Positions 14,235 to 60,829 of a stretch of DNA of 64,000 nucleotides are shown piece after piece. The position numbers and the translations under genes are program-made. The stretch's first letter is position 1; each line of letters starts with the position of its first letter. Origin of the DNA: Dimorphilus gyrociliatus (taxonomy: Eukaryota; Animalia; Annelida); assembly GCA_904063045.1 (NCBI GenBank), contig CAJFCJ010000026.1, positions 62,001 to 126,000 on the forward strand, written 5' to 3'. The notes under the pieces were generated by a model. It was given only the letters and a program-made list of their open reading frames with translations. It did no database searches and was not told where the DNA came from.

Positions 14235-15287
14235 ATGAATGAAACCGGTAGCTCTGCGATAGGTGAATTGATTATCAGACTTCATATTTATTATCTACCA
14301 TTAATAATTGTTTTTGGTCTGTTGGGTAATCTTCTATCGGCGATTGTATTCCTTTTTTCAAATCTCAATCAATTTTCATCAAGCGTCTATTTATCTGCTT
14401 TATCATTAGCTGATATATGTTTTCTGTTGTGTTTATTTTTGAATTGGCTACTATGGATAGGTACAGATTTAATTAACTATGAAGTATGTTGTCAACTATT
14501 TGCGTATATATCACATGTTAGCTCTTCACTATCATTCCTGTTTATTCTTGCCTTTACTGTTGAACGTTACGTAGTAGTACTTCTTCCCTTACATAAGTTT
14601 GTATGGTGTACAATTGGAAGAGCTCGAAAAATTATCTACATTCTAGTTGCTCTGTGCCTTGTTCTACAAATGATACATATATTCTCGAGCGAAGTTAAAG
14701 TTAAAAATGAATATAACGAAACAAAGCGAATATGTGAGCCTAAAAAGAGTTTTCGCTATCACTTAAATTTTTTTGTCCTCTTTGACTCAATTATAACTTT
14801 TTTTCTTCCATTTTTTGTAATATTAGTAGCCAATTTTCGTATTTGCGTTCGAATATGGATGACGATGAGAAGACGCGACGAAATGACAACAATACCAGCT
14901 TCTCAAAGACAAGAACTGCGAATAACTGTACTATTAGTTTTTGTTTCTGTAACATTTTTTGTATTAAATGCCCCTGCTCACGCATTTAAATTAGCCGCTG
15001 TTGTCCATACTGTACGGGATACTCATAGCGCCTATGGTCCATTAACTATAAACCTTCAGAGTTTATCAAATCTTCTCTACTACACTAGTCACGCTGTCAA
15101 CTTCCTTCTATACTCTATTGGAGGGAATACATTTAGACAAGCCCTCCTCAACTACGGAAGAAGACTTTTTCAACTGCAAAGGCATTCAAGCTATGCTGAA
15201 AGCAATCGCCAAACGTTATTAACACCCAATCACGGTTCACGCTCCAGTAATAGAAAGAACAGACAAAATATGGGATCGGCAATCTAA
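14235..15287 (+). CDS. Class A peptide GPCR, FMRFamide/sex-peptide/myosuppressin-receptor-like; coding region intronless
   Basis: 350 aa with 7 hydrophobic segments: GLLGN (TM1), LSLAD (TM2), VERY (TM3), NAP (TM6), NFLLY in place of NPxxY (TM7). Ligand cannot be assigned. Confidence 0.9.
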   Translation: MNETGSSAIGELIIRLHIYYLPLIIVFGLLGNLLSAIVFLFSNLNQFSSSVYLSALSLADICFLLCLFLNWLLWIGTDLINYEVCCQLFAYISHVSSSLSFLFILAFTVERYVVVLLPLHKFVWCTIGRARKIIYILVALCLVLQMIHIFSSEVKVKNEYNETKRICEPKKSFRYHLNFFVLFDSIITFFLPFFVILVANFRICVRIWMTMRRRDEMTTIPASQRQELRITVLLVFVSVTFFVLNAPAHAFKLAAVVHTVRDTHSAYGPLTINLQSLSNLLYYTSHAVNFLLYSIGGNTFRQALLNYGRRLFQLQRHSSYAESNRQTLLTPNHGSRSSNRKNRQNMGSAI

Positions 15288-22044: not shown

Positions 22045-25000
22045 TTAGATTAACTTGTTGATGGCATGATAAATTTGCATTAGAACGACAAAATGAACCG
22101 GAAGGCAAGATCTTCTATCGTTCAATTTAAAATCAAAAGTTAACCAAGAAAGCGCGTTGTATGTTTCCAAAACGTATCTAGTAAATAAAAAAGGAGTTAC
22201 TTAGCTGACAATGCAAATAAGACTATTTACCTTAATACATCAGATGTTAAATTTGAATCTAGTGGATGGGTTGAAGATTTTTGGGTGGAGGATGAAGCAA
22301 ATTCATCTGAATCTGTTTGGTGTAAGACATTGTGGAGGTGAAGAGCTGCTTTAAGGCATACTGGTAAGACTTTAGCTCGTTGGGGACATGCCGACCAAAA
22401 CCACCGAGGGAGAGCACCAGTAGCTGCGGTTGAAACATAAAAGCCTATTGCTAAAGGTTGCTGGAGAATAGTCTGTGGTATTTCTTGAGGATCAGAGTCT
22501 GCGGAATTTATGTTATTAATATTAGCCTGGCCTGCATTTGATAGATGGGTTGGCGATGAATGGCCATTGCTGACAGGTGAATTCGGAGCGTTCATTGATT
22601 TCAAAATATCATCGAAGTTCAATCCCAGAGTTTCATCATCTATTTCCCCAGCACCAATATAATCAATTCCGAGATCTTCTGCTTCCTCGTGCGGTTGTAT
22701 TGTTCCTTGGGTTTGGTACTGTGCTGTGGCTGATGTAGGGAGCACTAGAATATGAGTTGTTGAAGATGCGTCTCGAGGTGTCGATAAAGGACAAGAGCTG
22801 GAGCTCTTCTCTTCAACCTTTACACAATCTGGCATGACCTGAATAGACTGATGAGCCTCCATTGAAATCAGGCAAGCACCAACAATGTTGGCCCCAACAT
22901 TTGGTTTTAGATCTGAGCAGGCACTACAAACCTCTTTAAGTTCCGAATTCGATTTAGTTAGATTATCTCTTGACAGCAGGCCAGCCCAACCTTTCAATTC
23001 GCCATGACCAATGCGGCCAAATCGGCCGATCACAAGTCTCCAGCTCATTAACGTACCGCTTATCAGACCAATAATAAATTGCCAAAGCTTCTTTAAGCCT
23101 ATTTTTCGGGCTGATGCCTTACTTCTCCTAGCCCCTCTATTTGGTATGTAAATATTAATGGTGCAGGTATCTAGTAGCTCTCCATTATTATCAGTAACAG
23201 CCGCTAAGAGCCACTTTTGATCTTCAGATAAACAATATCCAACAAATAAAACTCCATCATGTGTATTTTCAGTCGAAGACCAACGCTTGTTGGTATTTGT
23301 GAGAGTGAAGGGAGGTGTGAATAATTTGTATTGCGGAGGATTTTCTAGTTTATTTAGTCTTCGTTCCCCTTCAGCTGCTGGACCGAAACCTGTCAAACAC
23401 CGACCAGATACTCTATGAGTAAGAATTCGGCTACACTTTGTATACACTGATAGAGCTAAAGTTTTCAACTGATTATTGTCAGGTGACATCCTTGCAGCTA
23501 AAATTTCATGTTGAGATATAATTTGCATGGTCAAACGAGAAGACACCTGTGGTCCAACTTGTTTACATAATTCATCAAAACACCGGAAAAATCCTAGTGT
23601 AGCCAACCGATCACCCTGGGGCCATGAGCTACCGGAGAAGGGATCTATTACATAAACAACGTATGTCGGTAAATTGTTATTATCTTCTTCTTTTATTCCT
23701 TTATTTTGCATGGCTAAAAATCCGGCTGTAATTGTAAAAAGAATATTATACGAATGAATACTAAAATACTAAATGACTTTACCTAATACTCCTTTGCATA
23801 TACGTGCATATATAGAAATTTTTGCTGCAATGGGAGTATTTCCTATCAACTTAAACCAGTCGTCCAAGGCAACATCTCCACTGACCATCTGTAAACATTG
23901 TTTACCAATCCTCAAAATTCCTTGTCTTAAAGAATCTATTGGTCGATGACGTCCAAGGTGACACGATTCATAAACGTCACTTAGTTCCCTTATGTAGGCA
24001 CAGACGTGATCAAGCACATAATCGTGCTCTGGAGCAAGAACAACATACGTAACATCTCTTGGTGCACTATAGGGTTCCATCAATAACTTATCCCAATACC
24101 GGAGAGAGTATGGAGCAACAGAAATCCATTCTTTATCATAACCGGCTAATATTTGTGGAATTGGTTGAGGAGCTGATGCTTCATCTGTTCCTCGACGTGC
24201 TAATAAATGAAAGTCTTTCCAAGTTAATGGTCCCATTACGTTATACGTCGTATCCCAGTTGTTATTTTTCTTTTGAATAGCATCTTGAAGAAGGGGATTT
24301 AGAGAGTTTAACAATCTCACTACATCGTGGCAATTTGCAGGAATTTTCGCGTTACTTTGGAAATAGGGCCATTTATGTAAGCAAGACTCTTTAAAAATAG
24401 TCTCATCAACGTGTTTTGGCTGAGGTGGATTGGAATTAGACGGATCACCACTAAATTTTGATAATTCAAGAGCTGACCAAGTTATTGCACATCCGTCTTG
24501 AATCTCTAACTGCCTTGTTCCACCATCACGCAACTCCATAGATCTTAATTGCTGTTCAAAATCGACGTCACTATCCCATTCAGAACTCATCGACAATTGA
24601 GCTGTCATAAAATACTGTCTAACTGCAGTCATTATATCGGAGGGTTGTGCATCTAGTTCTTTTTCCCCATTGCTTCTTGGTTTTGGCTGTTCTTTCGTAG
24701 TGTCAATCATACCAGTGATGTCCATTTGATCCTCCATAAATAATCCCGAAGCAATGGCATAACGCCTATTCATCACTGCTGAAAAGCCACAAACGCAAGT
24801 ACTCTCCAACTCGCGGCGATCGTTCTGACTGACTAAGTACGATTCGGCGTCTGATCCTCGTATATTCATATTACAAGCGCAGAGTGGGCAACTGTCAAAA
24901 TTATGGTCCTTAAATAAATTGAGCAAAGAGTCGTATAGTAGAACATTTAATAAAATGGCGTTCGCTTCAGCATAGTTAGTACTAGTCACTGGTTGTTTTG

Positions 25001-27555
25001 AATGAGCAACAGCAGCATATGAAGATGCATTGGAAGCGGGTGATTGCATATCATAACTGGAAGGTGCTCTCTCTAATCGGTCATTCTTAACGGGTGTTAA
25101 GCAGTTATCTTTTCTTATTACCTCATTTATGCCACTGTGCTGGTTTCGACCTGTAGCTTGAGGGATTTGTGGTAGTCGAACAGATACTGTATATTTCGGT
25201 AGGTTTGAAGCTTGGGACAAAGGACTAGCTATGCTGAGAGCATTAAACCGCTGTGCTGTTGGCCAATTACAGGCTTGGGCTAATGGACCTAATAAACTTT
25301 CAGATTGATGATCAAAAATACTTGATACGGCTGTATCCATTGCTTCATCTTGTACATTTGGGCATGGACTCTGTTCAGTTTGAGATTGTGAATTGGAACT
25401 TGGTGGAGTCGGATATAGTGAATCCATATTGTTATGCTTTTCATCTGTTGGAGTAGGCGAATCAGAGTCGTCACTTTCAAATATATTTTCCAAAGCCGTG
25501 AAATCGCTATGCTGCTCCAATGTATGTTTGACTCGCTCCTCCTCACCAAATGGTGATAATGCTGTTTGTGAAGGCTGAGGCGACGGCGAGGGAGATGGTT
25601 CAGAAATTTCGCTATCAGATTCGCCGTAGTCTCTTCTCAGTCTTTTTAGCGGCAACGCTAGAAAAGCACTAACATCTTCGAAGTTCTGCATGTTTTCATC
25701 ATTTAAGAATCCATCTTCTGGGGGAAATCTCTCTTTTAGAACAGGCATCATTGCATCTTGAAAAGGATAATTTTTGACAAATGGGGAAGATGGTGCACAA
25801 AGCGACGGTGGTGACTCTAGTGTAGAAGGAGTTTCATGTGGTGTTATCGGTTGGGTATTATTAACGCTTGGTGTTGGAGTGTTGCTGCTGAACGTTGGAA
25901 CTGATGGCGATTTTGTGTAAGGCGTTGGTGGGCCTGCTGTATTTGGGGGAAGTTGAGCGGAGGGCACAGCACCAATGAAATCTATATCACTAGGTATCAT
26001 TTGATCAATATGCTGAGTTCGAACATGAAATGCTATTCGTTGAGGAATTTTCTGTCTACTTCTTTTCCCCTCTGGCGATTTGTTCATACTTTTCGTGGAG
26101 TTACGCTGCCGTATTCTATTACATAGGCAATTGCTTTTAGCAGTTGGATCCATATAATCCCAGTTTGCAGGGTTACTTTCTTCTGGATTGGGCATTTCTC
26201 GCAATGGTGTCATTGAAGCATCACGCCAAGCTTTAAAGCAGATCTTCATTCCACATTCTGCAGCGCCCTCAACCCTGATTGGGGCTGGAGTCATGCCTTG
26301 ACTATCAGATAAAATCGAAAAGCTTGACTTTTGTGCTTGATCTGGTGGACAAGGGGTACAAGGCGGAGAATAAGCCAATATTGGCGGTGGCTGAGGTGCT
26401 GACGAATTATTGTATAATGTTGTTGCAGCATTCTCTGTTAGAACAAAGCAAGACGGATATTTTAAACGGGTACCCGCAACGACCACTTCAACAAATAGAG
26501 GTGGTTTAGAGCTATCATCTCTGTCGAACGTATCATCAATGTAGAAATGTTCTTTCCATTCGTGAAGCATTCTATGTATCCTAGGATCTCCTTCACGAAA
26601 TGCTGCACCAGTCAATGTACCTGCCATGCCATATGGCGCCAAAAGGACGGATACTTGCTGAGGATCTTGCTCAGCAATTAGTAGGTGATGCGCATGCAGT
26701 CGATATAGAATAGGATGTTGGCGAACATCTACTGATGCGCAAACTGTACTTTCTCCGTGTAAGAAAAAAGAAAAAGAGAATGAAAAATGGACACTTTTGT
26801 CTGGTTCCGTCACATCTTGAGTGTAAGGATGAAGAAACCATTTACCGATCCTTACAAAACCTTGAGCGATCAAATGTCTGAAAAAAATTTCATTTCAGGC
26901 AATTCCGTCAATGTTAATACATTGAAAAATTAAACTAATAATTATTTATTTAACCTATATATTTTTACACATTCTGTAAACGTGCATATTATAAAGAAAA
27001 ACTTACTTTTCTATAAGGTTGTGAATTGCTTTAAACAGAAGGATCCTGCACTGATAATTGAATTGGTTTCCCTGATCTTGATGCTCCCATTGACCACTTT
27101 CTTCATCTTTTAACTGGAATTCAGCTCGAATTCCTGGCAAATGGTGAGGCTGATCTTTGTACCAAAATACCCATAACTCTTTCTTGCCATTAAGAAGGGG
27201 GTTTTCAGTAGAATAATCATTAGGATCTATGAATCTTGTAGTTCTTTTCCAAACACATAATAATTCCTTACTAATCCCACGATTGTAAGCTTTTAAAATC
27301 GGGTCTTCCAACGGATCCTGGTACCGCCTCTGATTTGGCGCCACCAATTTACACCAACGAATACCATCTAATTCCGTCTGTGGGAAAGATAGAAATTACA
27401 TTTCAAGACGAATGTGATAGTTTTTAAGAGACAGAATTACAAGAGTATTTAAAATCATTCCACAAAAACATTCGATTACTTACGAGCGCAAATAAATTAG
27501 TGTAGCAATCTTCGAGGCTGCAGCCGTTCACCGTTGTGAGCGGTCGGCTCATCAT
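22045..27555 (-). CDS. MED13: Mediator of RNA polymerase II transcription subunit 13
   Basis: N-terminal [15 protein letters not shown] and KELLCVW; LYPTPPS motif; [20 protein letters not shown]; GPLTWKDFH; last exon [14 protein letters not shown]...RRSCLPVH with TAA at 22045. Confidence 0.97.
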
Positions 27556-44552: not shown

Positions 44553-45626
44553 TTACAAATGCAAAATACAAGTACGAATATTTGCAAGAGTTTTCTGCCA
44601 AGCTTCTGTTTCAAACGCTTGACATAGGATAGTCAAGAACTTTTCTTGGGCTTCGTAACGCTCTTTCAAGCCAAATTTAACAACATACTGTACTTTTCGC
44701 AGACAGACTGGACATAGTAACTGAGGTTGAGAGCAGGCTTCTTCTATAGAGCTGCTCTCATTCATCAGGCATGCGTAGTATTTGCAGTGTAACAAACCAA
44801 AAGTATGACAAGTTTCATGTAAGACTACTTTTATAATCTTCCACATTAATTCAGCATCTATTTTGGTTATATCGCTCCAACTATCAAGCCTTGGTTCAAA
44901 TCGACCAAAACAAAAGACAGCTGATCTAGTTGCTAAACTTCCCTGACCCAGTAGAAAATTTAAGTTCTCTGAAGGATATAAATCGATCCAAGAAGCACCT
45001 ATTATGGTTGCACCATCCGAAGGTAATAAGCTGCCCAAGTGAGATAGGACAGGACCAACTAATATTTGTTCCTTTTCAGTTTTCTGATGAACTCTTGTTT
45101 TATAATCACCATATGGTCGTTGAGGGAGTATTTGAACGTCGAATCCGTAAAAAAATACCGATAAATATTTCTGAAGAACTTGAAAAAATCCTTTAATATT
45201 TTCAAATGAAAAATTATGAATAAAGTCCGGAAATTCTCCAAGAGGTTGTAAATAGATTACTCGTCGTCGTTTATAATTTACTCTATGTAACTGAATTGGG
45301 GATCTCCACATTCCAAATGTCTGTAATTGCCAGTTTTTCAAATCGGTGATTGGAAGCGGATGAAAGACAGTCGTTAACGAGTGCAATGAATTTAATGCGT
45401 CGTTAGTTATTCGAAAAGTTCTATCGCTATCCTCCTCTTTAAATGAGTCTGTGGTCAAGGTAAAGTTTAAAATATGAAATTAAAGTAGTCTAAAAATTTC
45501 ACCGAAATCTGTATGAAATTTCAAAACAAAGTAAAATCTTCTCTCATTTTCATCTAATTTATTCAAATTTCCTAGAACATGCTTAAGGCTTTTTCGATTA
45601 GGTATACACCAACTTATACATAGCAT
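44553..45626 (-). CDS. AMZ2: Archaemetzincin zinc metalloprotease (2 exons)
   Basis: HETCHTFGLLHC (HExxHxxGxxH) followed by CLMNESSSIEEA..LCPVCLRK; IYLQPLG and DLYP..NFLLGQ. First exon MLCISWCIPNRK.. splices in frame. AMZ1 versus AMZ2 orthology not tested. Confidence 0.9.
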
Positions 45627-52719: not shown

Positions 52720-54725
52720 TTTCTCCCTTTTCTCTTTCACTCCTTCTCCCATTTTCCTTTTCTTCCCTCACGCATTAATATTATGTGTCTATTATCTCGT
52801 CTACTTACATATTTTATTACTGTGGAGAGAAAATGTCTTTTCCTATTCAAAAAAAAATATTTGGTTATATAATAAATTAAATTCTATATCGAATTTGTAT
52901 TATTTAAACATGAAAAAAAGGAAAATATCGAAATAATAATGTAATAATTGGAAAGAAGAGATTTTTCATAGTCTTTGAGCAGTATACGCACGTCTATTAT
53001 ATTACCTTTTCAATCTTACGTCTGATCCTCAATTAAAAAGTGAAATGTTTTCTTGCTGCTAAAAATTTTTTTTTAAAATAATAACTTACCTTTGGAGTGA
53101 TTTGTCATATTTCTTTTTCTTTTTTATCTTCCCTTTTCCCCCCTTTCCCCCCCCCCTTTTAAAAATAATACATCAAAGACGTTATTAATTTAACCTTTTT
53201 TTATAATTTCGAAAATTCGGAATTAATGTCTAATAAAAAAAAATAAAAAAAATTTTCCACTAATGGTAAGAAGCCTAATCTCAAGGGGAAAATATCATCT
53301 AAGGCTCTGCCTTAATTGTAGTAAAATTGACTGTATCATCACCAAAAATTTATATTAACAAGTTATGATAGCAATATAATATAATACTTCAAATGCTGTC
53401 GAAACCCTAATGCTTTAAAGTTGGTTCATAGGATTAAGCGCTGCACCTTCCTTTATTAAATTTTACTCCTTTGAGAAGAAAGAGTAAAAAAAACCTATTA
53501 TTTTTTACTGAACTATAGTAGCTTTCGGAGATACTCCAAGCTATCATTGGAATATACTCTAGAGGTTTAACTTGAATCATATTACAATTTTCTTCTTAAT
53601 TTTTTTGACAAGACCAACTTCCAGTAACATTCTAACAAAAATTTATGATGAAGAGTCTACTTCTAAATTGAATATGTACTAGAGAACAAACAACACCTGA
53701 AACTCTAAACTCATTCATCGTTGTGCTCTTTTATTGAATTCGACTACGAACAGCCTTCCTCAATTTAAGAATTGAAAAGAATCCTTTATATGGCGGCTTT
53801 CATTTATTTAATATTATTTTAATAATAATGTAATATTTTGCGTTCGAAATGAGAGAAAGTATTATCCCTAGACCTTTGGAGAAGTGCAGTCATTTTGCTG
53901 CCTATCGATATATCTTTTTTATTCTTAGGTGCAGAAAAAATTTGTTCTTATTTCCTTTGTCTTCGTTAAGGGGCATTTAGGAAAATAACTACTATTACAG
54001 GTTTAAAAGTGGTCACAGGCTTAGGAGCTACCCAATAGATAATCAATTTTTCCATTGCTGTAAATCAACTGCAATGATTTTATTTATCAACTCTAAATCA
54101 CATTATAATCTAAATAATTGTGTACTTGGCCCCCGTTTCAGATTGATTAAATATGCTATATACACCAAAAAAAAACACAGACCCTCCTTTCTACCTATAA
54201 ATACATTATTACCGAATTTAATCGAATAATACGGGAAAAAGCTGTTTGGGCCGTTTCTCTCTCACTCTCTCTTCTTTTTTTTTTATACAATTAAATTTAC
54301 GTAAAACAATCCAATACCCGATCTACATTTAACTTAAAAACTCTAATAATTAGTAAAATAAGCAATATTTCATAAGAAAGTGTGTATATGTGCATATATA
54401 ATTTTCCAAATATATATAGAGTATTTATATATATATATATATATATAATATATATATATATATATCAATAAATGCGTAATCTATGTACATTTATAATTTC
54501 AGAGTTATATATATAAATAAGAATATTTACAAAAGCACTAGATAATTTCATGAAGGACTGGGCTTTCAGGGATAGTTTGCATAAAATATTTTGTAAAAAA
54601 AATCCTTTACGCTTTACCCTGTTTTTACCCTGTCACTGCAGTTACATGTAACACTCTATCGATAGGTTAATTGGATATATACGAAGGTAAATATATATGC
54701 AGGTATAGAGAATATAGATATAAAT

Positions 54726-54761
<36 letters not shown>

Positions 54762-55017
54762 GAATATGTGTATGTTTATATGTATACATATATACATACA
54801 TATAAATGTTTATCTACAGGTATATGTATAAAGAATATATAAAGCAAACGTTATACAGACTTTATCTAGATAGAAAAAGGTATATTGCTAATTTGAATAC
54901 GCAACGATCAGTTAGTTAAAATTATTAGAGTTAACTTGATTGCGATTAGAATTTGTTTTTGTTATTATTTATAGGAATGGTTCAAAGCTTCGTTGTCTGT
55001 ATGATCTGTGTGTTGGC

Positions 55018-58000
55018 TCAATAGATGTAATCGTTATAGGATTTAAAATGCTGAAGGTCGTATACCTGCTGATGGTTTGATTGTTTATCGGAATCTGGAG
55101 GATTAGAAGTGTCGCTATCGCGTGCGGCCAGCGCCCGTGCAGCGGCGTCTGCAGACTCGTTCAAAGGATAAGCGAGATGAGGAGGAAGCGGTTCCGGAGG
55201 GGGCGGAGGTGGAGGAGGGCAAAGCTTGACTAGTGGAGCAATAACTGGTGAACAAACACTCTCCGTGTCCGTCTCTTCAGATACTTCCGATACCTCCTCT
55301 ATGACGTGAATATCAGTCAATTGCTTTTCGGAATTTCCCGCATTCGTAACGTTGAGCGATGGCGTTGGTGCTAGGCCATCAGCTGCTCGTTCTTGTCTTA
55401 ATTGTAGTAGAGGATTTAAAGCGGAGAAGTCGGTGAAAGGCTTTCGAGAAGGCGGATCAGGTGTCAAAGAACGAGCCAGACGAGGTGAGCTAGAAGACCG
55501 TAAACGAGGAGATCTAGAATTATTAGCATCAGAGCGCCTCATACGACCAGTACTGCTTGATGATGACGAGGAAGAGGCGTCCATAAGTGATTCCCGCCTA
55601 TTGAGCATTGGGTGACTTCGTGCTATATTGTTCAGTAGTCCAGCCGACATACTCATGGATAGAGAAAGCGATAGGGAAGCAACGGATGTCAATCCAGTAG
55701 ACGTATCTAATCGTTGAGGTTGTCCTGTTAAGGGGAAAAAGGGATAATGATAAAGAAGACTTAAGAAAGAAAGAAAACCCCCTAAGGGTTAGATTAGCGA
55801 ATTTATATTAAGTATATATGTACAGAATTTGTGTGCGCAATATAACAAAATAAAATATATGCACTTCTGGATAGAACGTTCCCCTGTACAGCAAATGGAC
55901 GAATAAAAAAGAAAAAAAAACCAACCGAAAACGATATTCATTACCCTTCTTGCTCTTTATATACTTACGTCTAGGCCGACATGCCGCTATATCTTCCTCG
56001 CTTGCTCCGGATTGTTGGCAAAGGAATTTCAAAGCGTGTATTTCTTTCTGTCGACACACCAATATGGTATATAGATTTGCATGCGCTTTTATTTATTTGT
56101 TTGTATTATTTGTTTTATTTATACGTCTTTCAAGTGTTTCTCATCTTCCAATAACTCGATTTTCTTCTCAGCGCGCCGTCTTGCCCTCTTCTGTAGCTTG
56201 ATACGAAATTCCTGTCGTTGTTTTGCAGTAACCATAATTCCTAACGGGAAAGATAGGAATAGAAAAGAGAAAATTATCTCTTAGTGAAGATGTATAACTT
56301 TATATACTTTACACTAAGTTTATGCTTATTTAATTTTCTTATCTTACCGTTAATTACTCTCAAGATCCGCCAGAGAAGGAAGACTATAAGTAAGGCTGCC
56401 GCCTCTTCGCCTTGAACCTCTCCGATTCCTTTCAGAAATACTAAATCTAAAGCAAACGACGCTACTATTATCACAGCATCAAATATCTCCATTTTGTGCT
56501 TGAAAAATTCTAGACCCATTCCAATCACTTTGAGCAAGACCTAAAAACAGTAAAAAAAAATAATCTGTATATATATGTATTTCAACGACGATTGGCTGTT
56601 AAGATGCAATTACAGAAACAGTTAAGACCTGGATAACAAAAATGCCAAGTATAGTAATACTGCAGAAATGCAGGCTGTGAGCAATCTTGAGTAGAAATTT
56701 CGATTTCGAATACGTATGGCTGACTGGTTCGTTTGATAAATAATGACTGTCATTCGAAAATCCTCCACCGACTCCTTGCTCAGATAAATATGGTGGCGGC
56801 GTCGAAGAGGAAGTAGCAGAAGGCGATGACGACTCCTCGCCATTGGTTGTTACGGATTCCGACTTCTGGCTGTATTCGCACAATCGCCTCATTTGCATAG
56901 AAGCCGAACTGACGTTTGGCGAATTATCAGGCATGGAAAGTAGGCTGAGAATGTGATCGACGTTCGAACCTTCATAGCCTCGCAATTCTTCCGCGTGAGC
57001 GACTCGAATGAATCCGAGCACGTTGTCGAGATGAGATTGCGTTTCTTCGTACTGTCCTAATACGTTTCGTAGGATAAGGATATTGTCCGCTTTATTACAT
57101 AGCGCGAAAAAGATTTTTTTCCCTCCGTCAAGCGTATAATTTGGGTGCATAAAACTAAAATATAGCGAAAGGATAACGGGAAGAGACTGGAGGGAGAGTG
57201 GCAAGAAAAAAAGGACACAGTAAAAATTCGCCACTGGCGTTCGTCCTGCCATTTGCGTACGGAAATTGCGGGCAAGACGACTGCAAACGATCAAAGTGGC
57301 AAATCGATAAGATTCGGCGCGCACCTGCAAGCTTTTCTGAAGAAAGGTGGAAGAGGAGAGCGAACCCGACTGATTGAGGGCAGTTTATCGCCGTTCACTT
57401 CCCCAAGGAGTCAAGTTAGCACTACGTCTCCCAATTCTTTACTGTACACATTATTTTTTTTTTAGGTCTATTTTGCGTCAAAATCTATTTTAAACTTTTT
57501 GTTGCCTTCAGAATCGTTTCATTTCATTCCGTTCTAATTCTATTTGTTCATATGTTTTTACGATTCATAATTTTAATATTTTCCTTCCCGTTTCTCTTTT
57601 TCCCAAAAGTCCCGCTTCCCTTTTCCGTTTTACTGTTTTTCTATTCTATTCTTTCCTTCTTCATTCTTTATCTGCCTATCTATGTGACTATCTATCTTAC
57701 CTCGTATGGCGTGCAGGTCGAGAAGGATCTCGGCAATCACGACTCCGGCGTCAATTAGAACTAATACGCAGAGAAGAATTTGTAGCGGATTGCTTTCGAG
57801 TAACTTTACCAACTTTCCTCGCCATCTGCAAACAATAGATTATTCAGGAATTGGGTTAACACAAGACTTGTAGAGAATTGGCAGTAGACAAGCGCGTCGC
57901 ATAACGCCGCAGCACGACTGCAATGCAATTCATAAAGCGGCCGTTCGTCCTGACGCGTCAATTAGGCTATGCGACGCAGCTGTGAATTTCTTCCCTCCCC

Positions 58001-58368
58001 CTTCTCTATTTCTCTTTTTTTATCTCTTTTTATATCTTTTCCCTCAACGAATCTTTCTCAATTTCAGAAGCTTAAGAATAAAGTAGAAAAAAAAACAATA
58101 TAAAAAAATAACTAACGTTTTAGGCTCGTCATCTTGTAACGAACGTAACTCTTCGTCTAAAAGTTCCGAATCCACGCTGTCGTCCTCCAGGTCTTTTAAG
58201 AATTTTTCATCCTTCAACCACTCGCAACGACTGCCGTATTGTGACAGCCTGTTTAGATGATTTATAGTAGAAGTTGCAGTTGAAATATTAACGTTATTAA
58301 TACTACTTCAGAAAAAAAGACTGTAGAAATTAAAATAATAAATTGAAAAATTCGTTTAACCTCCGCAT
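55018..58368 (-). CDS. Voltage-gated proton channel (Hv family), atypical (exons 58368-58361, 58248-58117, 57825-57701, 57056-56629, 56540-56348, 56240-56125, 56047-55969, 55724-55018)
   Basis: S1 LCVLVLIDAGVVIAEILLD with the selectivity Asp; S2 AHSLHFCSITILGIFVIQ; S3 EIFDAVIIVASFALD; S4 LLWRILRVING; coiled coil ending KEIHALKFLCQQSG. All junctions keep frame. The stop may instead be at 54969 if a 49-nt intron (55017-55065) is spliced; start ATG is a best guess. Confidence 0.88.
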
Positions 58369-58659
58369 GACGCCGAGTGGAAGACGGCGCCATTTGTAAG
58401 AAAAAACTTAATTATTTGAAAAAATTTTTTATCACGCACACCCTCTTCTCTGACTCGTTTGGCTTATCTTTTTTCTTTTTCTATATCTCTTTTTTCGCTC
58501 TTCCCCACTTCTCCTTTTATACTAATTTCCTTTTCTGTTTTTTTTTTGTGAGATCTTTTCGATTTTGCCTTTAATATAATGCATATATCTCGTTGAAGCT
58601 CGGATAACCTACCCTTATCAGTATCTTTACCTTCGTCCTTCTCGCGTTGACTGTCTTTC

Positions 58660-58750
58660 CTTTTTCCGTCGCTCTCTCGCTCTCTCGCTCTTCCTCTCTC
58701 TCGCTCTCGCTCTCTCTCTCTCGCTCTCTCTCTCACTTTTTTTTCTCTCT
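58660..58750. repeat. Imperfect (CT/CG)n pyrimidine microsatellite upstream of the Hv start
   Basis: Direct reading of ctctcg/ctctct arrays. Confidence 0.8.
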
Positions 58751-60829
58751 TTCTCTATGAAATAATCTGGTGTGGCTTTCGTCCGTCTCCTGACTGATGG
58801 CGTTCTCAAACTACGAGCATAGACGCCTAGCGGCGTCGTATGCTTGTTTCTTTTTAATTAAAAGAATTGAATGTATACAAACGCAATTGTACGTATACAT
58901 CTGATTACGAACACCACTTAAAAAAGAGTAATGAAAAAAAAAGACAAAGAATAGGAAAAAAAAGAAAGAAACGAAACAATAATGTCAATTTTCATGTGAA
59001 GAAACAAATATAGTTCAAAGTGTACTCTCTATTAGTAAAAATTCTTATATATTGACACATTTATGATTGTATAATTATAAAAGCTAGAGTAATCTTAATG
59101 TAAATTATATATGATATTTGTATTATAATATACTATTTGTATAGTATACATAAGTACAAGAGAGTACAACCAAGTCGGTGCGTGCGTATCGTGCTAATCG
59201 ATATAAGGCGCCAACTTTTTTCTTTCAGCACGAACCAACGGTCGCTGTAATACGCCATCTTTCGGTGGGAATTATACCACCTAATAGACTCGCCTTGTTG
59301 GTGAATACATAGATAAAAAGGCAATCCATGTAGAAGTAGTGCGGAAATAATAGAAAGCATAAATTGACATTCGAAAAAAATAGAAGAATATTTAAAATTT
59401 GTAGATATACTGTATTTACTGGTGAACGGTATATATACCTCGTATAAGTTTTACCCTCCGATTCTTTATGCATAATTCAGCACCTGCTATACGTTATGAC
59501 AGAGACACTTGCTATAGTATATTGTTATATGGCGAAAGAAAATATGACGAACAGAAATCGAACGCCTTATTGACCCTCCGTTGTATACAGACGACTAGTC
59601 GAACAACGAGAAGTCGGCGTCAGAAACTATTGTTGCGGTAACCGTATAGTCAATTTCGTTGCAGTTGGCGATCAATTAATGCTGAACGCCGAAAAAACCT
59701 CGCATGGCAATCAAGGTCGATACGTTTGTGCATAATTGAAATAGTCGAACGAACGAAGCGCAAATGGTCCCGCGAGATGCCGAATAGTTTTGACGATCGC
59801 GCAGTTTTTTGGCAGCTGTTCATGACATTTCAGTGTAGTCTTGTTTTCGTACAATTAGTACAAGAATATTTCTAGAGTAATTTTACAACTATATATCATA
59901 GATAGAAGCGAAGAATTATATTTATGAGTATCCATATATTTAGATAATTTATATGAAATACATACAACTTATATAGTTTTATTTATACATTTGTTAATAT
60001 ATCTATCTTTTAGAGATACTCTAGATTGTATACAAATTTACATTTAATATTCCCTACTTAGGCTATTCTGTTGGATGTTTTTTTCAAATTTTGTAGATAA
60101 ATAGAACTGAAAGTATTTCTTTAAAATTCTGATATACTGTATTTTGCTGTATATGCGATAAGAACTTCTGTATGTTGGTGTATGAGTGAAAGTATGTCTG
60201 CTCGTGTATATGTTGGTAAAGCAGTACGAAATTTCTCTTACTGTGGTTAAATATATAGAGACAAATACATACATTCTCACTTGAAAACACTGTAGAACAG
60301 CGTTTTCACATTCTTTGACATTACTTACATGGAGGATGCCGGGAGGGCTGGGGGAAGCATGACTTTGAAACGACATGCGAAAATTATGATCCAATACCAA
60401 GTAAAAAAAAGACAAGGCAGAATAGAATGAATATATCAGAGTGGAGCATAAGACGAATGCTCACTCGCTCAAGCCGTCAAGATGAATGGACGAGGTGTGG
60501 TGCTGGCGTCGTATCGCCTATAGTACAGGAGAGGCGCCCTTTACATTTGCTCTATCGGACTGCTGTCAACCGTAAGACGCCAACTCAGGCCTATAATTCT
60601 ACTCGCTAGCACCACTTTGCACTTATCGTATAGACGCCTTACCTATTCACAAACGGTTAGAATCCCGTTAAAGGCACCTTTGAAGGCGAGTACCAACAAA
60701 AAAAAGCACCAATCACCCAAATATGCAGCTATCGATTTGAGAGGAGCGCTATACAGTCAGTCAGCGACGCGGCGACGACCACCATCCTACCCTTTTTTCT
60801 TTTATATGTGTTTTGTCCTCTATATTTTT

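What the first reader, a model, noticed from the sequence alone, without database searches (positions are those of the whole stretch)
56348..57825. Hv proton channel with a two-arginine S4 (LLWRILR) plus E153Q
Seen: S4 reads FLLWRILRVING, so the first gating arginine of RxWRxxRxxN (human R205) is Leu, and the S2 position of human E153 is Gln (IFVIQVLLK). D112, F150, K157, D174, D185, W207 and N214 equivalents are retained. Known: D112 sets proton selectivity, and E153 neutralisation shifts Hv1 activation negative. From memory, the molluscan Hv3 class (Aplysia) has an LPWRxxR S4 and leak-like behaviour. Inference: an Hv3-like or new Hv paralogue outside molluscs, perhaps open at negative voltages, with loss of a paired positive and negative charge.
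Basis: partly seen in the sequence, partly recalled or inferred. Interest (0 to 1): 0.8.

Follow-up and report, generated by a model that had tools for sequence, protein, structure and literature searches.

The report
Annelid two-arginine proton-channel relative
This marine worm gene encodes a proton-channel relative that lacks the first of three voltage-sensing charges; it is real and expressed, but it belongs to a group of unusual invertebrate proton channels already catalogued, though untested, in annelids.

Summary
A minus-strand, 8-exon gene (about 60360 to 55018) encodes a roughly 603-aa Hv-type voltage-sensor protein. S1 keeps the selectivity Asp. S4 reads FLLWRILRVIN, so Leu replaces human R205. 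Gln replaces E153. F150, K157, D174, D185, W207 and N214 equivalents are kept.

Spliced contigs from four public runs carry the same exons. The S4 codons are unchanged in all four, so this is not an assembly error.

The locus is DgyrCDS13600 of the annelid Dimorphilus gyrociliatus. The public model starts inside an intron and omits S1.

In trees the protein groups with R1-less, big-loop, long-tail "unconventional" Hv proteins and against canonical Hv1 (100/99). It falls in an "LLWR" subclade with Owenia, Lingula, Bugula and Macrostomum. That subclade is sister to the mollusc/brachiopod xPWR Hv3 clade, which contains the tested AcHv3.

A 2023 review already reports such proline-less proteins in annelids. 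It prints an Eisenia sequence with the same VIQV S2 stretch and the same legible S4 residues.

R1 loss is clade-wide and old. E153Q is seen only in Dimorphilus and Eisenia, so the two charges were not lost together.

Function is inferred: probably a proton-selective channel with reduced gating charge. I rate it a new member of a known kind, of moderate interest. The relation to TMEM266 could not be tested phylogenetically.

The parts
60329..60360 (-). Coding part of first exon 1a. The in-frame ATG is at 60360-60358 (MLPPALPASSM...). An upstream out-of-frame ATG at 60376-60374 opens a short overlapping ORF.
   Evidence: Sequence. The 30-mer that RNA contigs of X4 and X10 join to downstream exons maps uniquely to 60329-60358.
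59439..59486 (-). Optional 48-nt cassette exon. It carries stops in the exon-1a frame and its own in-frame ATG (MHKESEGKTYTR...).
   Evidence: Joint 58247/59438 and the loose end at 59486 in run X4; sequence.
58361..58547 (-). Alternative 5' exon joined to exon 2. Its in-frame ATG gives MRR-LSQYG...
   Evidence: Joint 58247/58360 in X4, X6 and X8; contig pieces 58360-58547; sequence.
58117..58248 (-). Exon 2: acidic N-terminal segment LSQYGSRCEWLKDEKFLKDLEDDSVDSELLDEELRSLQDDEPK.
   Evidence: Translation; joint 57825/58117. The Eisenia sequence reads VSQYGGRCDWLKNQFLRDLEGDSVDAEILDEELRLLQEQQPK.
57701..57825 (-). Exon 3: S1 helix with the selectivity-filter Asp (GAC 57752-57750) and the E119/D123 equivalents (IAEILLDL). 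This exon is missing from the public model DgyrCDS13600.
   Evidence: Joint 57055/57700 occurs in X4, X6 and X8; X6 contig 12 holds exons 3 and 4 together. P0151 starts in the intron.
56629..57056 (-). Exon 4: S1-S2 loop of about 115-120 aa plus S2. The first ~45 aa form a conserved helical module; the rest is an S/T/P-rich linker with two N-x-S sequons. S2 reads KIAHSLHFCSITILGIFVIQ and holds the H140 and F150 equivalents and Gln (CAG 56631-56629) at the E153 site.
   Evidence: (100% identical to P0151).
56348..56540 (-). Exon 5: end of S2 (K157 equivalent), S3 (D174 and D185 equivalents), and S4 FLLWRILRVIN. Leu (CTT 56378-56376) sits at the R205 site; W207, R208, R211 and N214 equivalents are kept.
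   Evidence: (PF00520, E=3.6e-5).
56125..56240 (-). Exon 6: helical continuation of S4 (GIMVTAKQRQEFRIKLQKRARRRAEKKIELLEDEKHLKD), the presumed coiled-coil/dimerisation region.
   Evidence: AF2 of the Bugula relative gives one continuous S4-to-C helix, residues 240-314.
55969..56047 (-). Exon 7: KEIHALKFLCQQSGASEEDIAACRPR, the clade-specific 'ACxP' motif.
55018..55724 (-). Exon 8: 234-aa S/P-rich, probably disordered tail. It begins with the conserved LDTSTGLTSVASLSLSLSMSMS motif and includes a PPPPPPPP run and the stop codon.
   Evidence: In the X6/X8 lineages, 27 of the 30 listed differences in this exon are synonymous.

Best explanation
[quoted passage not shown] That branch had already lost the outermost S4 arginine and gained a large extracellular S1-S2 insert and a long cytoplasmic tail. 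The gene sits in a proline-less 'LLWR' subclade (annelids, brachiopod, bryozoans, flatworm), sister to the mollusc/brachiopod xPWR Hv3 clade that contains the functionally tested AcHv3.

Shown here: the gene, its splicing and its expression; the residues; its position in the tree; and purifying selection.

Inferred mechanism: a pore-less four-helix voltage sensor, probably dimerised through the helix that continues S4. It likely conducts protons selectively because the Asp(S1)-Arg(R2) pair, D185, W207 and N214 are intact. With only two S4 arginines it should move less gating charge and so have a shallower or faster voltage response. The annelid-specific E153Q removes an internal countercharge that stabilises the closed state, which could push activation to more negative voltages. 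Because it keeps F150 and has no S4 proline, I expect it to leak less than AcHv3. The glycosylatable loop and the S/P-rich tail probably serve regulation or trafficking.
For: Gene and expression:
- All seven coding introns have GT..AG ends, and all are seen as joints in spliced contigs of up to four runs.
- The reading frame has no internal stop.
- 32 of the 39 listed differences to related lineages are synonymous.

Identity:
- P0151 (DgyrCDS13600 of Dimorphilus gyrociliatus) is 100% identical over exon 4.

Family:
- The best PDB match is human Hv1, at 1.8e-17.
- PF00520 scores above its cutoff.

Clade:
- In the careful IQ-TREE, the canonical split is 100/99, the xPWR split 100/98, the LLWR split 91/72, and Dimorphilus+Owenia 94/88.
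- Rooted on a protist-like Hv, LLWR+xPWR form a clade at 98 SH-aLRT.
- P0140 in the xPWR clade is Aplysia LOC101855857, 980 aa. This matches AcHv3 in length and in L429/P430.

Shared derived characters:
- the loop module
- a 3-residue-longer S3-S4 linker
- the ACxP and TSxGL..SMSM motifs

Functional precedent:
- AcHv3 is proton-selective, with leak and about 60 mV per e-fold.
- R205A in human Hv1 gives faster gating and 0.63x gating charge. E153A/C shift activation by -55 to -101 mV.
Against: - No current has been measured for any LLWR-type protein.
- E153N in human Hv1 shifts threshold by only about -1 mV, and R205A by about -1 mV, so gating could be near normal.
- Only one of the two Zn-site histidines is present, and no Pfam VGPC1_C coiled-coil match was found.
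- The tail resembles the disordered tail of the non-conducting TMEM266.
- LLWR monophyly has only moderate support (91/72).
- The full 603-aa spliced product was never searched or folded as one chain.
Confidence: 0.6

Rival explanations
1. It is an essentially normal voltage-gated proton channel. Two S4 arginines are enough, and the L and Q substitutions change kinetics but not the basic depolarisation-activated, outward-rectifying behaviour.
For: In human Hv1, R205A and E153N leave the threshold almost unchanged (-1 mV each), and channels truncated after R2 still gate. Unlike AcHv3, this protein keeps F150 of the hydrophobic gasket and has no helix-breaking proline.
Against: The only tested R1-less natural channel (AcHv3) gates very weakly and leaks. 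Other neutral E153 and R205 mutants shift activation by -36 to -101 mV.
Confidence: 0.2
2. It is a non-conducting voltage sensor or scaffold like vertebrate TMEM266. The long disordered tail would be the output, and proton conduction would be lost or irrelevant.
For: It has a long tail after a coiled-coil-like helix, as in TMEM266. The review supplement lists the Lingula relative under an NCBI name, 'C15orf27 homolog'. The spacing from the D185 site to the first S4 charge site is 23 residues, as in TMEM266 numbering (M185 to R208). The ESM Atlas lists Hv1 and TMEM266 clusters at similar scores.
Against: TMEM266 is defined by Val at D112, Met at D185 and a full RxWRxKRxxD S4. This protein has Asp, Asp and LxWRxxRxxN. 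These proton-channel residues are conserved from flatworm to annelid in the subclade.
Confidence: 0.15
3. The substitutions are an assembly error, or the gene is a decaying pseudogene.
For: The public gene model is wrong at its 5' end: it starts in an intron and lacks S1.
Against: Spliced contigs from four runs of different studies carry the same exons. S4 is unchanged in all, and the Gln codon is unchanged in X4. The frame is open over 1812 nt and differences are mostly synonymous. Eisenia has the same VIQV stretch and the same legible S4 letters.
Confidence: 0.02

Closest known systems
Eisenia fetida transcript GIUK01058977 (putative unconventional Hv, printed in the supplement of Chaves et al. 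2023, Biomolecules 13:1035, PMC10377628)
   Same: Apparent orthologue. It shares the N-terminal SQYG.RC.WLK...DSVD.E.LDEELR segment, the S1 stretch VLVLIDAGVVIAEILLDLHA, the S2 stretch GIFVIQV with Gln at the E153 site, the legible S4 letters FLL-RILRVINGIMVTAK, the IKLQKRA.RRAEKK helix, EEDxxxCRP, and DTSxGLxSxASLSL.
   Different: Its S1-S2 loop (~300 aa) and tail are much longer. It is only listed, not characterised. The W is not legible in the held text of the supplement.
Aplysia californica AcHv3 (LOC101855857, 980 aa; Chaves et al. 2023, FEBS J 290:1008, PMC10911540)
   Same: It has Leu at R1, Asp in S1, W/R2/R3, a big S1-S2 loop with a homologous first module, a coiled-coil-like helix followed by a long tail, and the ACxP-type motif. 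It lies on the same side of the canonical/unconventional split.
   Different: AcHv3 has Pro before the Trp (LPWR), NS instead of NG after S4, Leu at F150 and Glu at E153. It belongs to the sister xPWR clade. Its leak and 60 mV per e-fold gating are measured; nothing is measured for this protein.
Lingula anatina LOC106155662 (P0064), Owenia fusiformis P0004, Bugula neritina HVCN1 (P0044), Macrostomum lignano P0155
   Same: They fall in the same LLWR subclade and have the same architecture and S4 pattern, F-L-[LM]-W-R-x-[LAV]-R.
   Different: All keep Glu at the E153 site. Bugula and P0114 have Met at F150. Lingula lacks the E119 equivalent.
Human Hv1 (HVCN1; PDB 5oqk, 3wkv)
   Same: It shares the VSD fold and key residues D112, E119, D123, H140, F150, K157, D174, D185, W207, R208, R211 and N214.
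   Different: The differences from Hv1 are R205 to Leu, E153 to Gln, no H193 equivalent, a 3-residue-longer S3-S4 linker, an S1-S2 insert of ~115-120 aa and a ~300-aa C-terminus (603 aa against 273 aa).
Vertebrate TMEM266 / HVRP1 / C15orf27
   Same: It is a pore-less VSD with a coiled coil and a ~250-aa disordered tail, and it has the same S3-S4 spacing.
   Different: TMEM266 has Val at D112, Met at D185, all three arginines plus K213 and D217, and no proton current. No TMEM266 sequence could be fetched, so no tree was made.

Membership tests
Hv (voltage-gated proton channel) family | Four-helix voltage-sensor domain with no pore domain | tested here: met
   S1 is in exon 3 and S2-S4 in exons 4-5. 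After S4 come only a helix and a low-complexity tail up to the stop. The best PDB hit is human Hv1 at 1.8e-17. PF00520 matches only the S2-S4 part.
Hv (voltage-gated proton channel) family | Acidic selectivity-filter residue in mid-S1 (human D112) | tested here: met
   VLIDAGVV, with GAC at 57752-57750, aligns with the Asp of Lingula and Bugula S1.
Hv (voltage-gated proton channel) family | S4 signature RxWRxxR | tested here: not met
   S4 is LLWRILR: R1 is Leu, while W, R2 and R3 are present. The same departure occurs in the proton-conducting AcHv3.
Hv (voltage-gated proton channel) family | Hv-specific Asp in outer S3 (D185) and Asn at 214 | tested here: met
   FALDLVFL and RVIN.
Hv (voltage-gated proton channel) family | Voltage- and delta-pH-gated, perfectly proton-selective current | not testable with these tools
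   This needs electrophysiology.
Unconventional Hv3 class (AcHv3 type) | First S4 arginine missing | tested here: met
   Leu (CTT) at 56378-56376.
Unconventional Hv3 class (AcHv3 type) | Proline immediately before the S4 tryptophan (xPWRxxR) | tested here: not met
   Leu-Leu-Trp. All 35 xPWR proteins form their own split, 100/98.
Unconventional Hv3 class (AcHv3 type) | Very large S1-S2 loop and large intracellular C-terminus | tested here: met
   The loop is ~115-120 aa and the C-terminus ~300 aa. The first loop module aligns with that of xPWR proteins.
Unconventional Hv3 class (AcHv3 type) | Groups with AcHv3 rather than with canonical Hv1 in a tree | tested here: met
   The canonical versus (LLWR + xPWR) split is 100/99. 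The clade has 98 SH-aLRT when rooted on P0156. Within it the gene lies in the LLWR sister group, not inside xPWR.
TMEM266 / HVRP1 | Non-acidic residue (Val) at the D112 site and Met at the D185 site | tested here: not met
   Both sites are Asp here.
TMEM266 / HVRP1 | Full RxWRxKRxxD S4 | tested here: not met
   S4 here is LLWRILRVIN.
TMEM266 / HVRP1 | Phylogenetic grouping with vertebrate TMEM266 | not tested
   No TMEM266 sequence was obtained. Word searches were swamped by low-complexity words, and the one representative search listed none in its top 150.

The most novel reading that the evidence does not exclude
The proline-less LLWR subclade (annelids, brachiopod, bryozoans, flatworm) may be a functionally distinct and untested Hv subtype, not just 'Hv3 without the proline'. 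Two stronger versions are not excluded.

(a) It may be the spiralian counterpart of vertebrate TMEM266, still carrying the proton-channel residues. That would show what TMEM266 evolved from.

(b) In Dimorphilus, an earlier scan note reports a canonical-type paralogue with Lys at the selectivity site. If so, this two-arginine, E153Q protein would be the worm's only Asp-bearing, proton-selective Hv and would carry all Hv function.
Probability: 0.2. Interest if true: 0.6.

Novelty: new member of a known kind. Interest (0 to 1): 0.35.

Why it matters
AcHv3 is the only R1-less Hv ever recorded. It differs from Hv1 in three ways at once: no R1, a proline in S4, and Leu at F150. Its leak therefore cannot be assigned to any one change.

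The LLWR proteins are a natural dissection of that problem:
- Owenia, Lingula and Macrostomum have no R1 and no proline, and they keep F150 and E153.
- Dimorphilus and Eisenia carry E153Q on top of that.

Recording these proteins would show what loss of R1 alone does, and what removal of the internal countercharge adds.

The corrected gene model, with S1 restored, is needed before anyone clones this gene. Otherwise the finding adds one species to a group already listed in the literature.

Tried and rejected
- Word searches. The profile of LLWR proteins plus window exons and the profile with loops and class-2 fragments were both swamped by low-complexity words, with 8000 candidates and almost no hits. 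So I obtained no TMEM266 sequence and no wider list of named relatives. Only the region-restricted search with Owenia P0004 worked.
- Family scans. Pfam on single exons, the 243-aa ORF and the tail found nothing beyond PF00520. NCBIfam found nothing.
- ESM Atlas. It gave Hv1 and TMEM266 clusters at similar, sub-threshold scores, which does not discriminate between them.
- Foldseek. The AF2 model of the Bugula relative gave only the expected VSD fold (Ci-VSP, TM-score by the target's length 0.72) and no match for the loop module.
- Exon 4 acceptor. My first guess, a near-S2 acceptor at 56723 with a short loop, was rejected. RNA contigs use 57056.
- Class 2. The source organism of the 'LLLWRIARVVDG' fragments could not be named; only a run accession was returned.
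- Joined model. The joined 603-aa spliced protein was not sent to any search or fold tool. Exons were used by reference, and P0151, which equals exons 4-8, stood in for the gene in alignments and trees. One script walked the exon coordinates only to check frame, stops and codon changes, and it printed and saved no sequence.
Full report
**1. What is in the sequence**

The window is AT-rich eukaryotic DNA with short introns. On the minus strand, three open stretches between 56274 and 57812 carry S1, S2 and S3-S4 of a voltage-sensor domain.

I laid contigs of four public runs on 54500-60300. This gave spliced joints with GT..AG ends at every junction (checked). The coding exons are:
- 60360-60329 (in-frame ATG at 60360)
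- 58248-58117
- 57825-57701
- 57056-56629
- 56540-56348
- 56240-56125
- 56047-55969
- 55724-55018

Two further 5' exons are used alternatively (59486-59439 and ...58547-58361). Each supplies its own in-frame ATG, and all converge on LSQYGSRCEW.... The frame from exon 2 to the stop is open: 1779 nt with no internal stop. With exon 1a the product is about 603 aa.

**2. The observation**

S1 reads VLVLIDAGVVIAEILLDL. Exon 4 ends ...HSLHFCSITILGIFVIQ. Exon 5 reads VLLKVIGMGLEFFKHKMEIFDAVIIVASFALDLVFLKGIGEVQGEEAAALLIVFLLWRILRVIN.

Alignment to human Hv1 (5oqk: E=1.6e-9 for exon 5, 1.8e-17 for the S2-to-coiled-coil piece) puts Leu opposite R205 and Gln opposite E153. The D112, E119, D123, H140, F150, K157, D174, D185, W207, R208, R211 and N214 equivalents are kept. 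There is no H193 equivalent. The S3-S4 linker is three residues longer than in human Hv1.

The Gln codon is the last codon of exon 4, and RNA confirms the junction.

**3. Not an artefact**

- Run X4 (a different organism label and study) has a 1602-nt spliced contig covering exons 8 to 4 with no difference.
- A genuine metatranscriptome RNA library (X10) has a spliced contig over exons 8 to 5 with no difference.
- X6 and X8 (lineages about 95-97% identical) use the same joints and differ in exon 5 at a single base (56508, Glu to Asp in LEFF). Their S4 is therefore identical.
- Of 39 listed differences to X6/X8, 32 are synonymous. That includes 27 of 30 in the low-complexity tail, so even the tail is under purifying selection.
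- One caveat: the difference table was truncated, so the Gln codon is certain only for X4.

**4. Organism and public annotation**

An earlier scan note named the genome as Dimorphilus gyrociliatus. I tested this. A word search with the Owenia relative returned DgyrCDS13600 [Dimorphilus gyrociliatus] (P0151, 572 aa), which is 100% identical to exon 4 and matches exons 5-8.

That public model begins MAGRTPVANF..., which lies inside intron 3, and it lacks exons 1-3. It therefore has no S1 and no selectivity Asp. The RNA joints 57055/57700 and 57825/58117 show that the real transcript includes them.

**5. Relatives**

The exhaustive representative search with exon 5 found 395 proteins at E of 0.001 or better. 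Their S4 motifs fall into four kinds:
- canonical LRLWRxxRxxNG
- xPWRxxRxxNS. This kind includes 980-aa Aplysia LOC101855857, which matches AcHv3 in length and in L429/P430.
- F-L-L-W-R-x-L-R-x-x-N-G, the kind seen here. It appears in dozens of exon-sized fragments and in full-length proteins from Owenia (annelid), Lingula LOC106155662, Bugula, an unnamed Logan transcript and Macrostomum.
- L-L-L-W-R-I-A-R-V-V-D-G, seen only in fragments of unknown origin.

The window exons align collinearly with the full-length LLWR proteins from the N-terminal acidic segment to the tail motif.

**6. Phylogeny**

I built a careful IQ-TREE (LG+C20+F+G4 PMSF; 58 rows, 324 columns). Rows left out were fragments and rows lacking S1-S2: P0097, P0107, P0083, P0091, P0115, P0100, P0050 and the repeat protein P0034. 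Supports were:
- canonical split: 100/99
- xPWR split: 100/98
- LLWR split: 91/72
- Dimorphilus+Owenia: 94/88

Rooted on a protist-like Hv (P0156), LLWR plus xPWR form one clade (98 SH-aLRT) nested among canonical animal Hv1. The canonical set includes sponge and cnidarian sequences.

Lingula has one gene in each subclade (P0064 and P0130). So the LLWR/xPWR split is older than the brachiopod lineage.

Shared derived characters back the clade:
- Leu at R1
- a homologous ~45-aa first module of the S1-S2 insert
- the longer S3-S4 linker
- the ACxP motif
- the TSxGL..SLS..SMSM motif

AF2 on the Bugula member (mean pLDDT 79) models that loop module as a ~20-residue extension of the S1 helix plus a short return helix. 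It models S4 as running on as one long helix into the cytoplasm. The fold search returns only VSDs.

**7. What is already known**

- Chaves et al. (FEBS J 2023) showed that AcHv3 is proton-selective but leaks, and that its conductance changes e-fold per ~60 mV. AcHv3 is 980 aa, with a 299-aa S1-S2 loop, a 535-aa C-terminus and L429/P430.
- The 2023 review states that annelids, bryozoans and nemerteans have Hv proteins with large loops and large intracellular domains but without the S4 proline.
- The review's supplement prints an Eisenia fetida transcript (GIUK01058977) that is clearly the orthologue of this gene. It includes GIFVIQVFLK and FLL-RILRVINGIMVTAK (the W is dropped in the held text).
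- I found no paper on Dimorphilus Hv.

The class is therefore known and catalogued in annelids. No LLWR-type member has been recorded.

**8. The two substitutions have different histories**

Leu at R1 is shared by every LLWR and xPWR protein. Gln at the E153 site is found only in Dimorphilus and Eisenia. Owenia, Lingula, Bugula, P0114 and Macrostomum have Glu, as do all canonical proteins and most xPWR proteins.

The 'paired loss' is therefore at best a late adjustment within annelids, not a joint event.

Nearly all xPWR proteins have Leu at F150. The annelid, Lingula and Macrostomum LLWR proteins keep Phe.

**9. Mechanism (inferred)**

The Asp(S1)/R2 pair, D185, W207 and N214 argue for proton-selective conduction. 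Two arginines argue for reduced gating charge.

In the mutation meta-analysis:
- R205A gives much faster gating and 0.63x gating charge, with little shift.
- R205Q/N/C give shifts of -36 to -50 mV.
- E153A/C give -55 to -101 mV, but E153N gives about -1 mV.

The direction (easier opening) is therefore plausible, but the size is open. With F150 intact and no proline, I expect less closed-state leak than in AcHv3.

Two N-x-S sequons in the loop fit an extracellular or luminal position.

Rival readings are near-normal gating, a TMEM266-like non-conducting sensor, and artefact. They are weighed in their own sections.

**10. Limits**

- The joined spliced protein was not searched or folded.

**Verdict**

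It is a new member of the known unconventional Hv group, with a corrected gene model and a lineage-specific E153Q. Interest is moderate.

Noticed in passing
window 56599-57330 and 57701-58248 (minus strand): The public gene model DgyrCDS13600 (P0151) starts at an ATG inside intron 3 and lacks exons 1-3, so the deposited protein has no S1 helix or selectivity Asp. RNA contigs show the true 5' structure.
   Followed up: yes
window 60358-60376, 58361-58395 and 59439-59486 (minus strand): There are three alternative 5' exons. In two of them the first ATG is out of frame and opens a short ORF that ends at a TGA in exon 2, while the in-frame start is the second ATG. This looks like overlapping-uORF control of translation.
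   Followed up: partly
proteins P0007, P0051, P0069, P0070, P0097 and others; locus L001: About 20 cluster representatives, all exon-sized fragments of unknown organisms, have S4 LLLWRIARVVDG. R1 is Leu, and Asp replaces N214, as at D217 of TMEM266. The S3-S4 linker is very like this gene's. This may be a further R1-less Hv/TMEM266-like class in another phylum.
   Followed up: partly
supplement of PMC10377628; P0127: The 'conventional' Eisenia Hv printed there reads LVVLSSGLVVVAELLISL, with Ser where D112 and D123 should be. P0127 also shows Ser at D112, and an earlier scan note reports Lys at that site in a second Dimorphilus paralogue. Annelid canonical-type Hv genes may have lost the selectivity Asp. 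The Eisenia reading rests on machine-read PDF text.
   Followed up: no
window 22227-26873 (minus strand): Two long ORFs match the Mediator subunit 13 C-terminal domain and the medPIWI MID domain (E=9.6e-60 and 1.3e-18). This is a Med13-like gene.
   Followed up: partly
window 14235-15287 (+) and 44553-45458 (-): There is an intron-poor rhodopsin-family GPCR ORF (7tm_1, E=3.9e-26) and an ORF with a Peptidase_M54 (archaemetzincin-like) match (E=1.8e-10).
   Followed up: no
window 58650-58760: A GA/GAGC-rich microsatellite lies in the 5' intron region of the gene. Read laying skipped it as a repeat.
   Followed up: no
protein P0146 (440 aa) and P0034 (844 aa, 14 matched stretches): Among the hits, one protein carries two Hv-type S4 motifs in tandem and another matched the query in 14 separate stretches, suggesting concatenated voltage-sensor repeats. 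Their origin is unknown.
   Followed up: no
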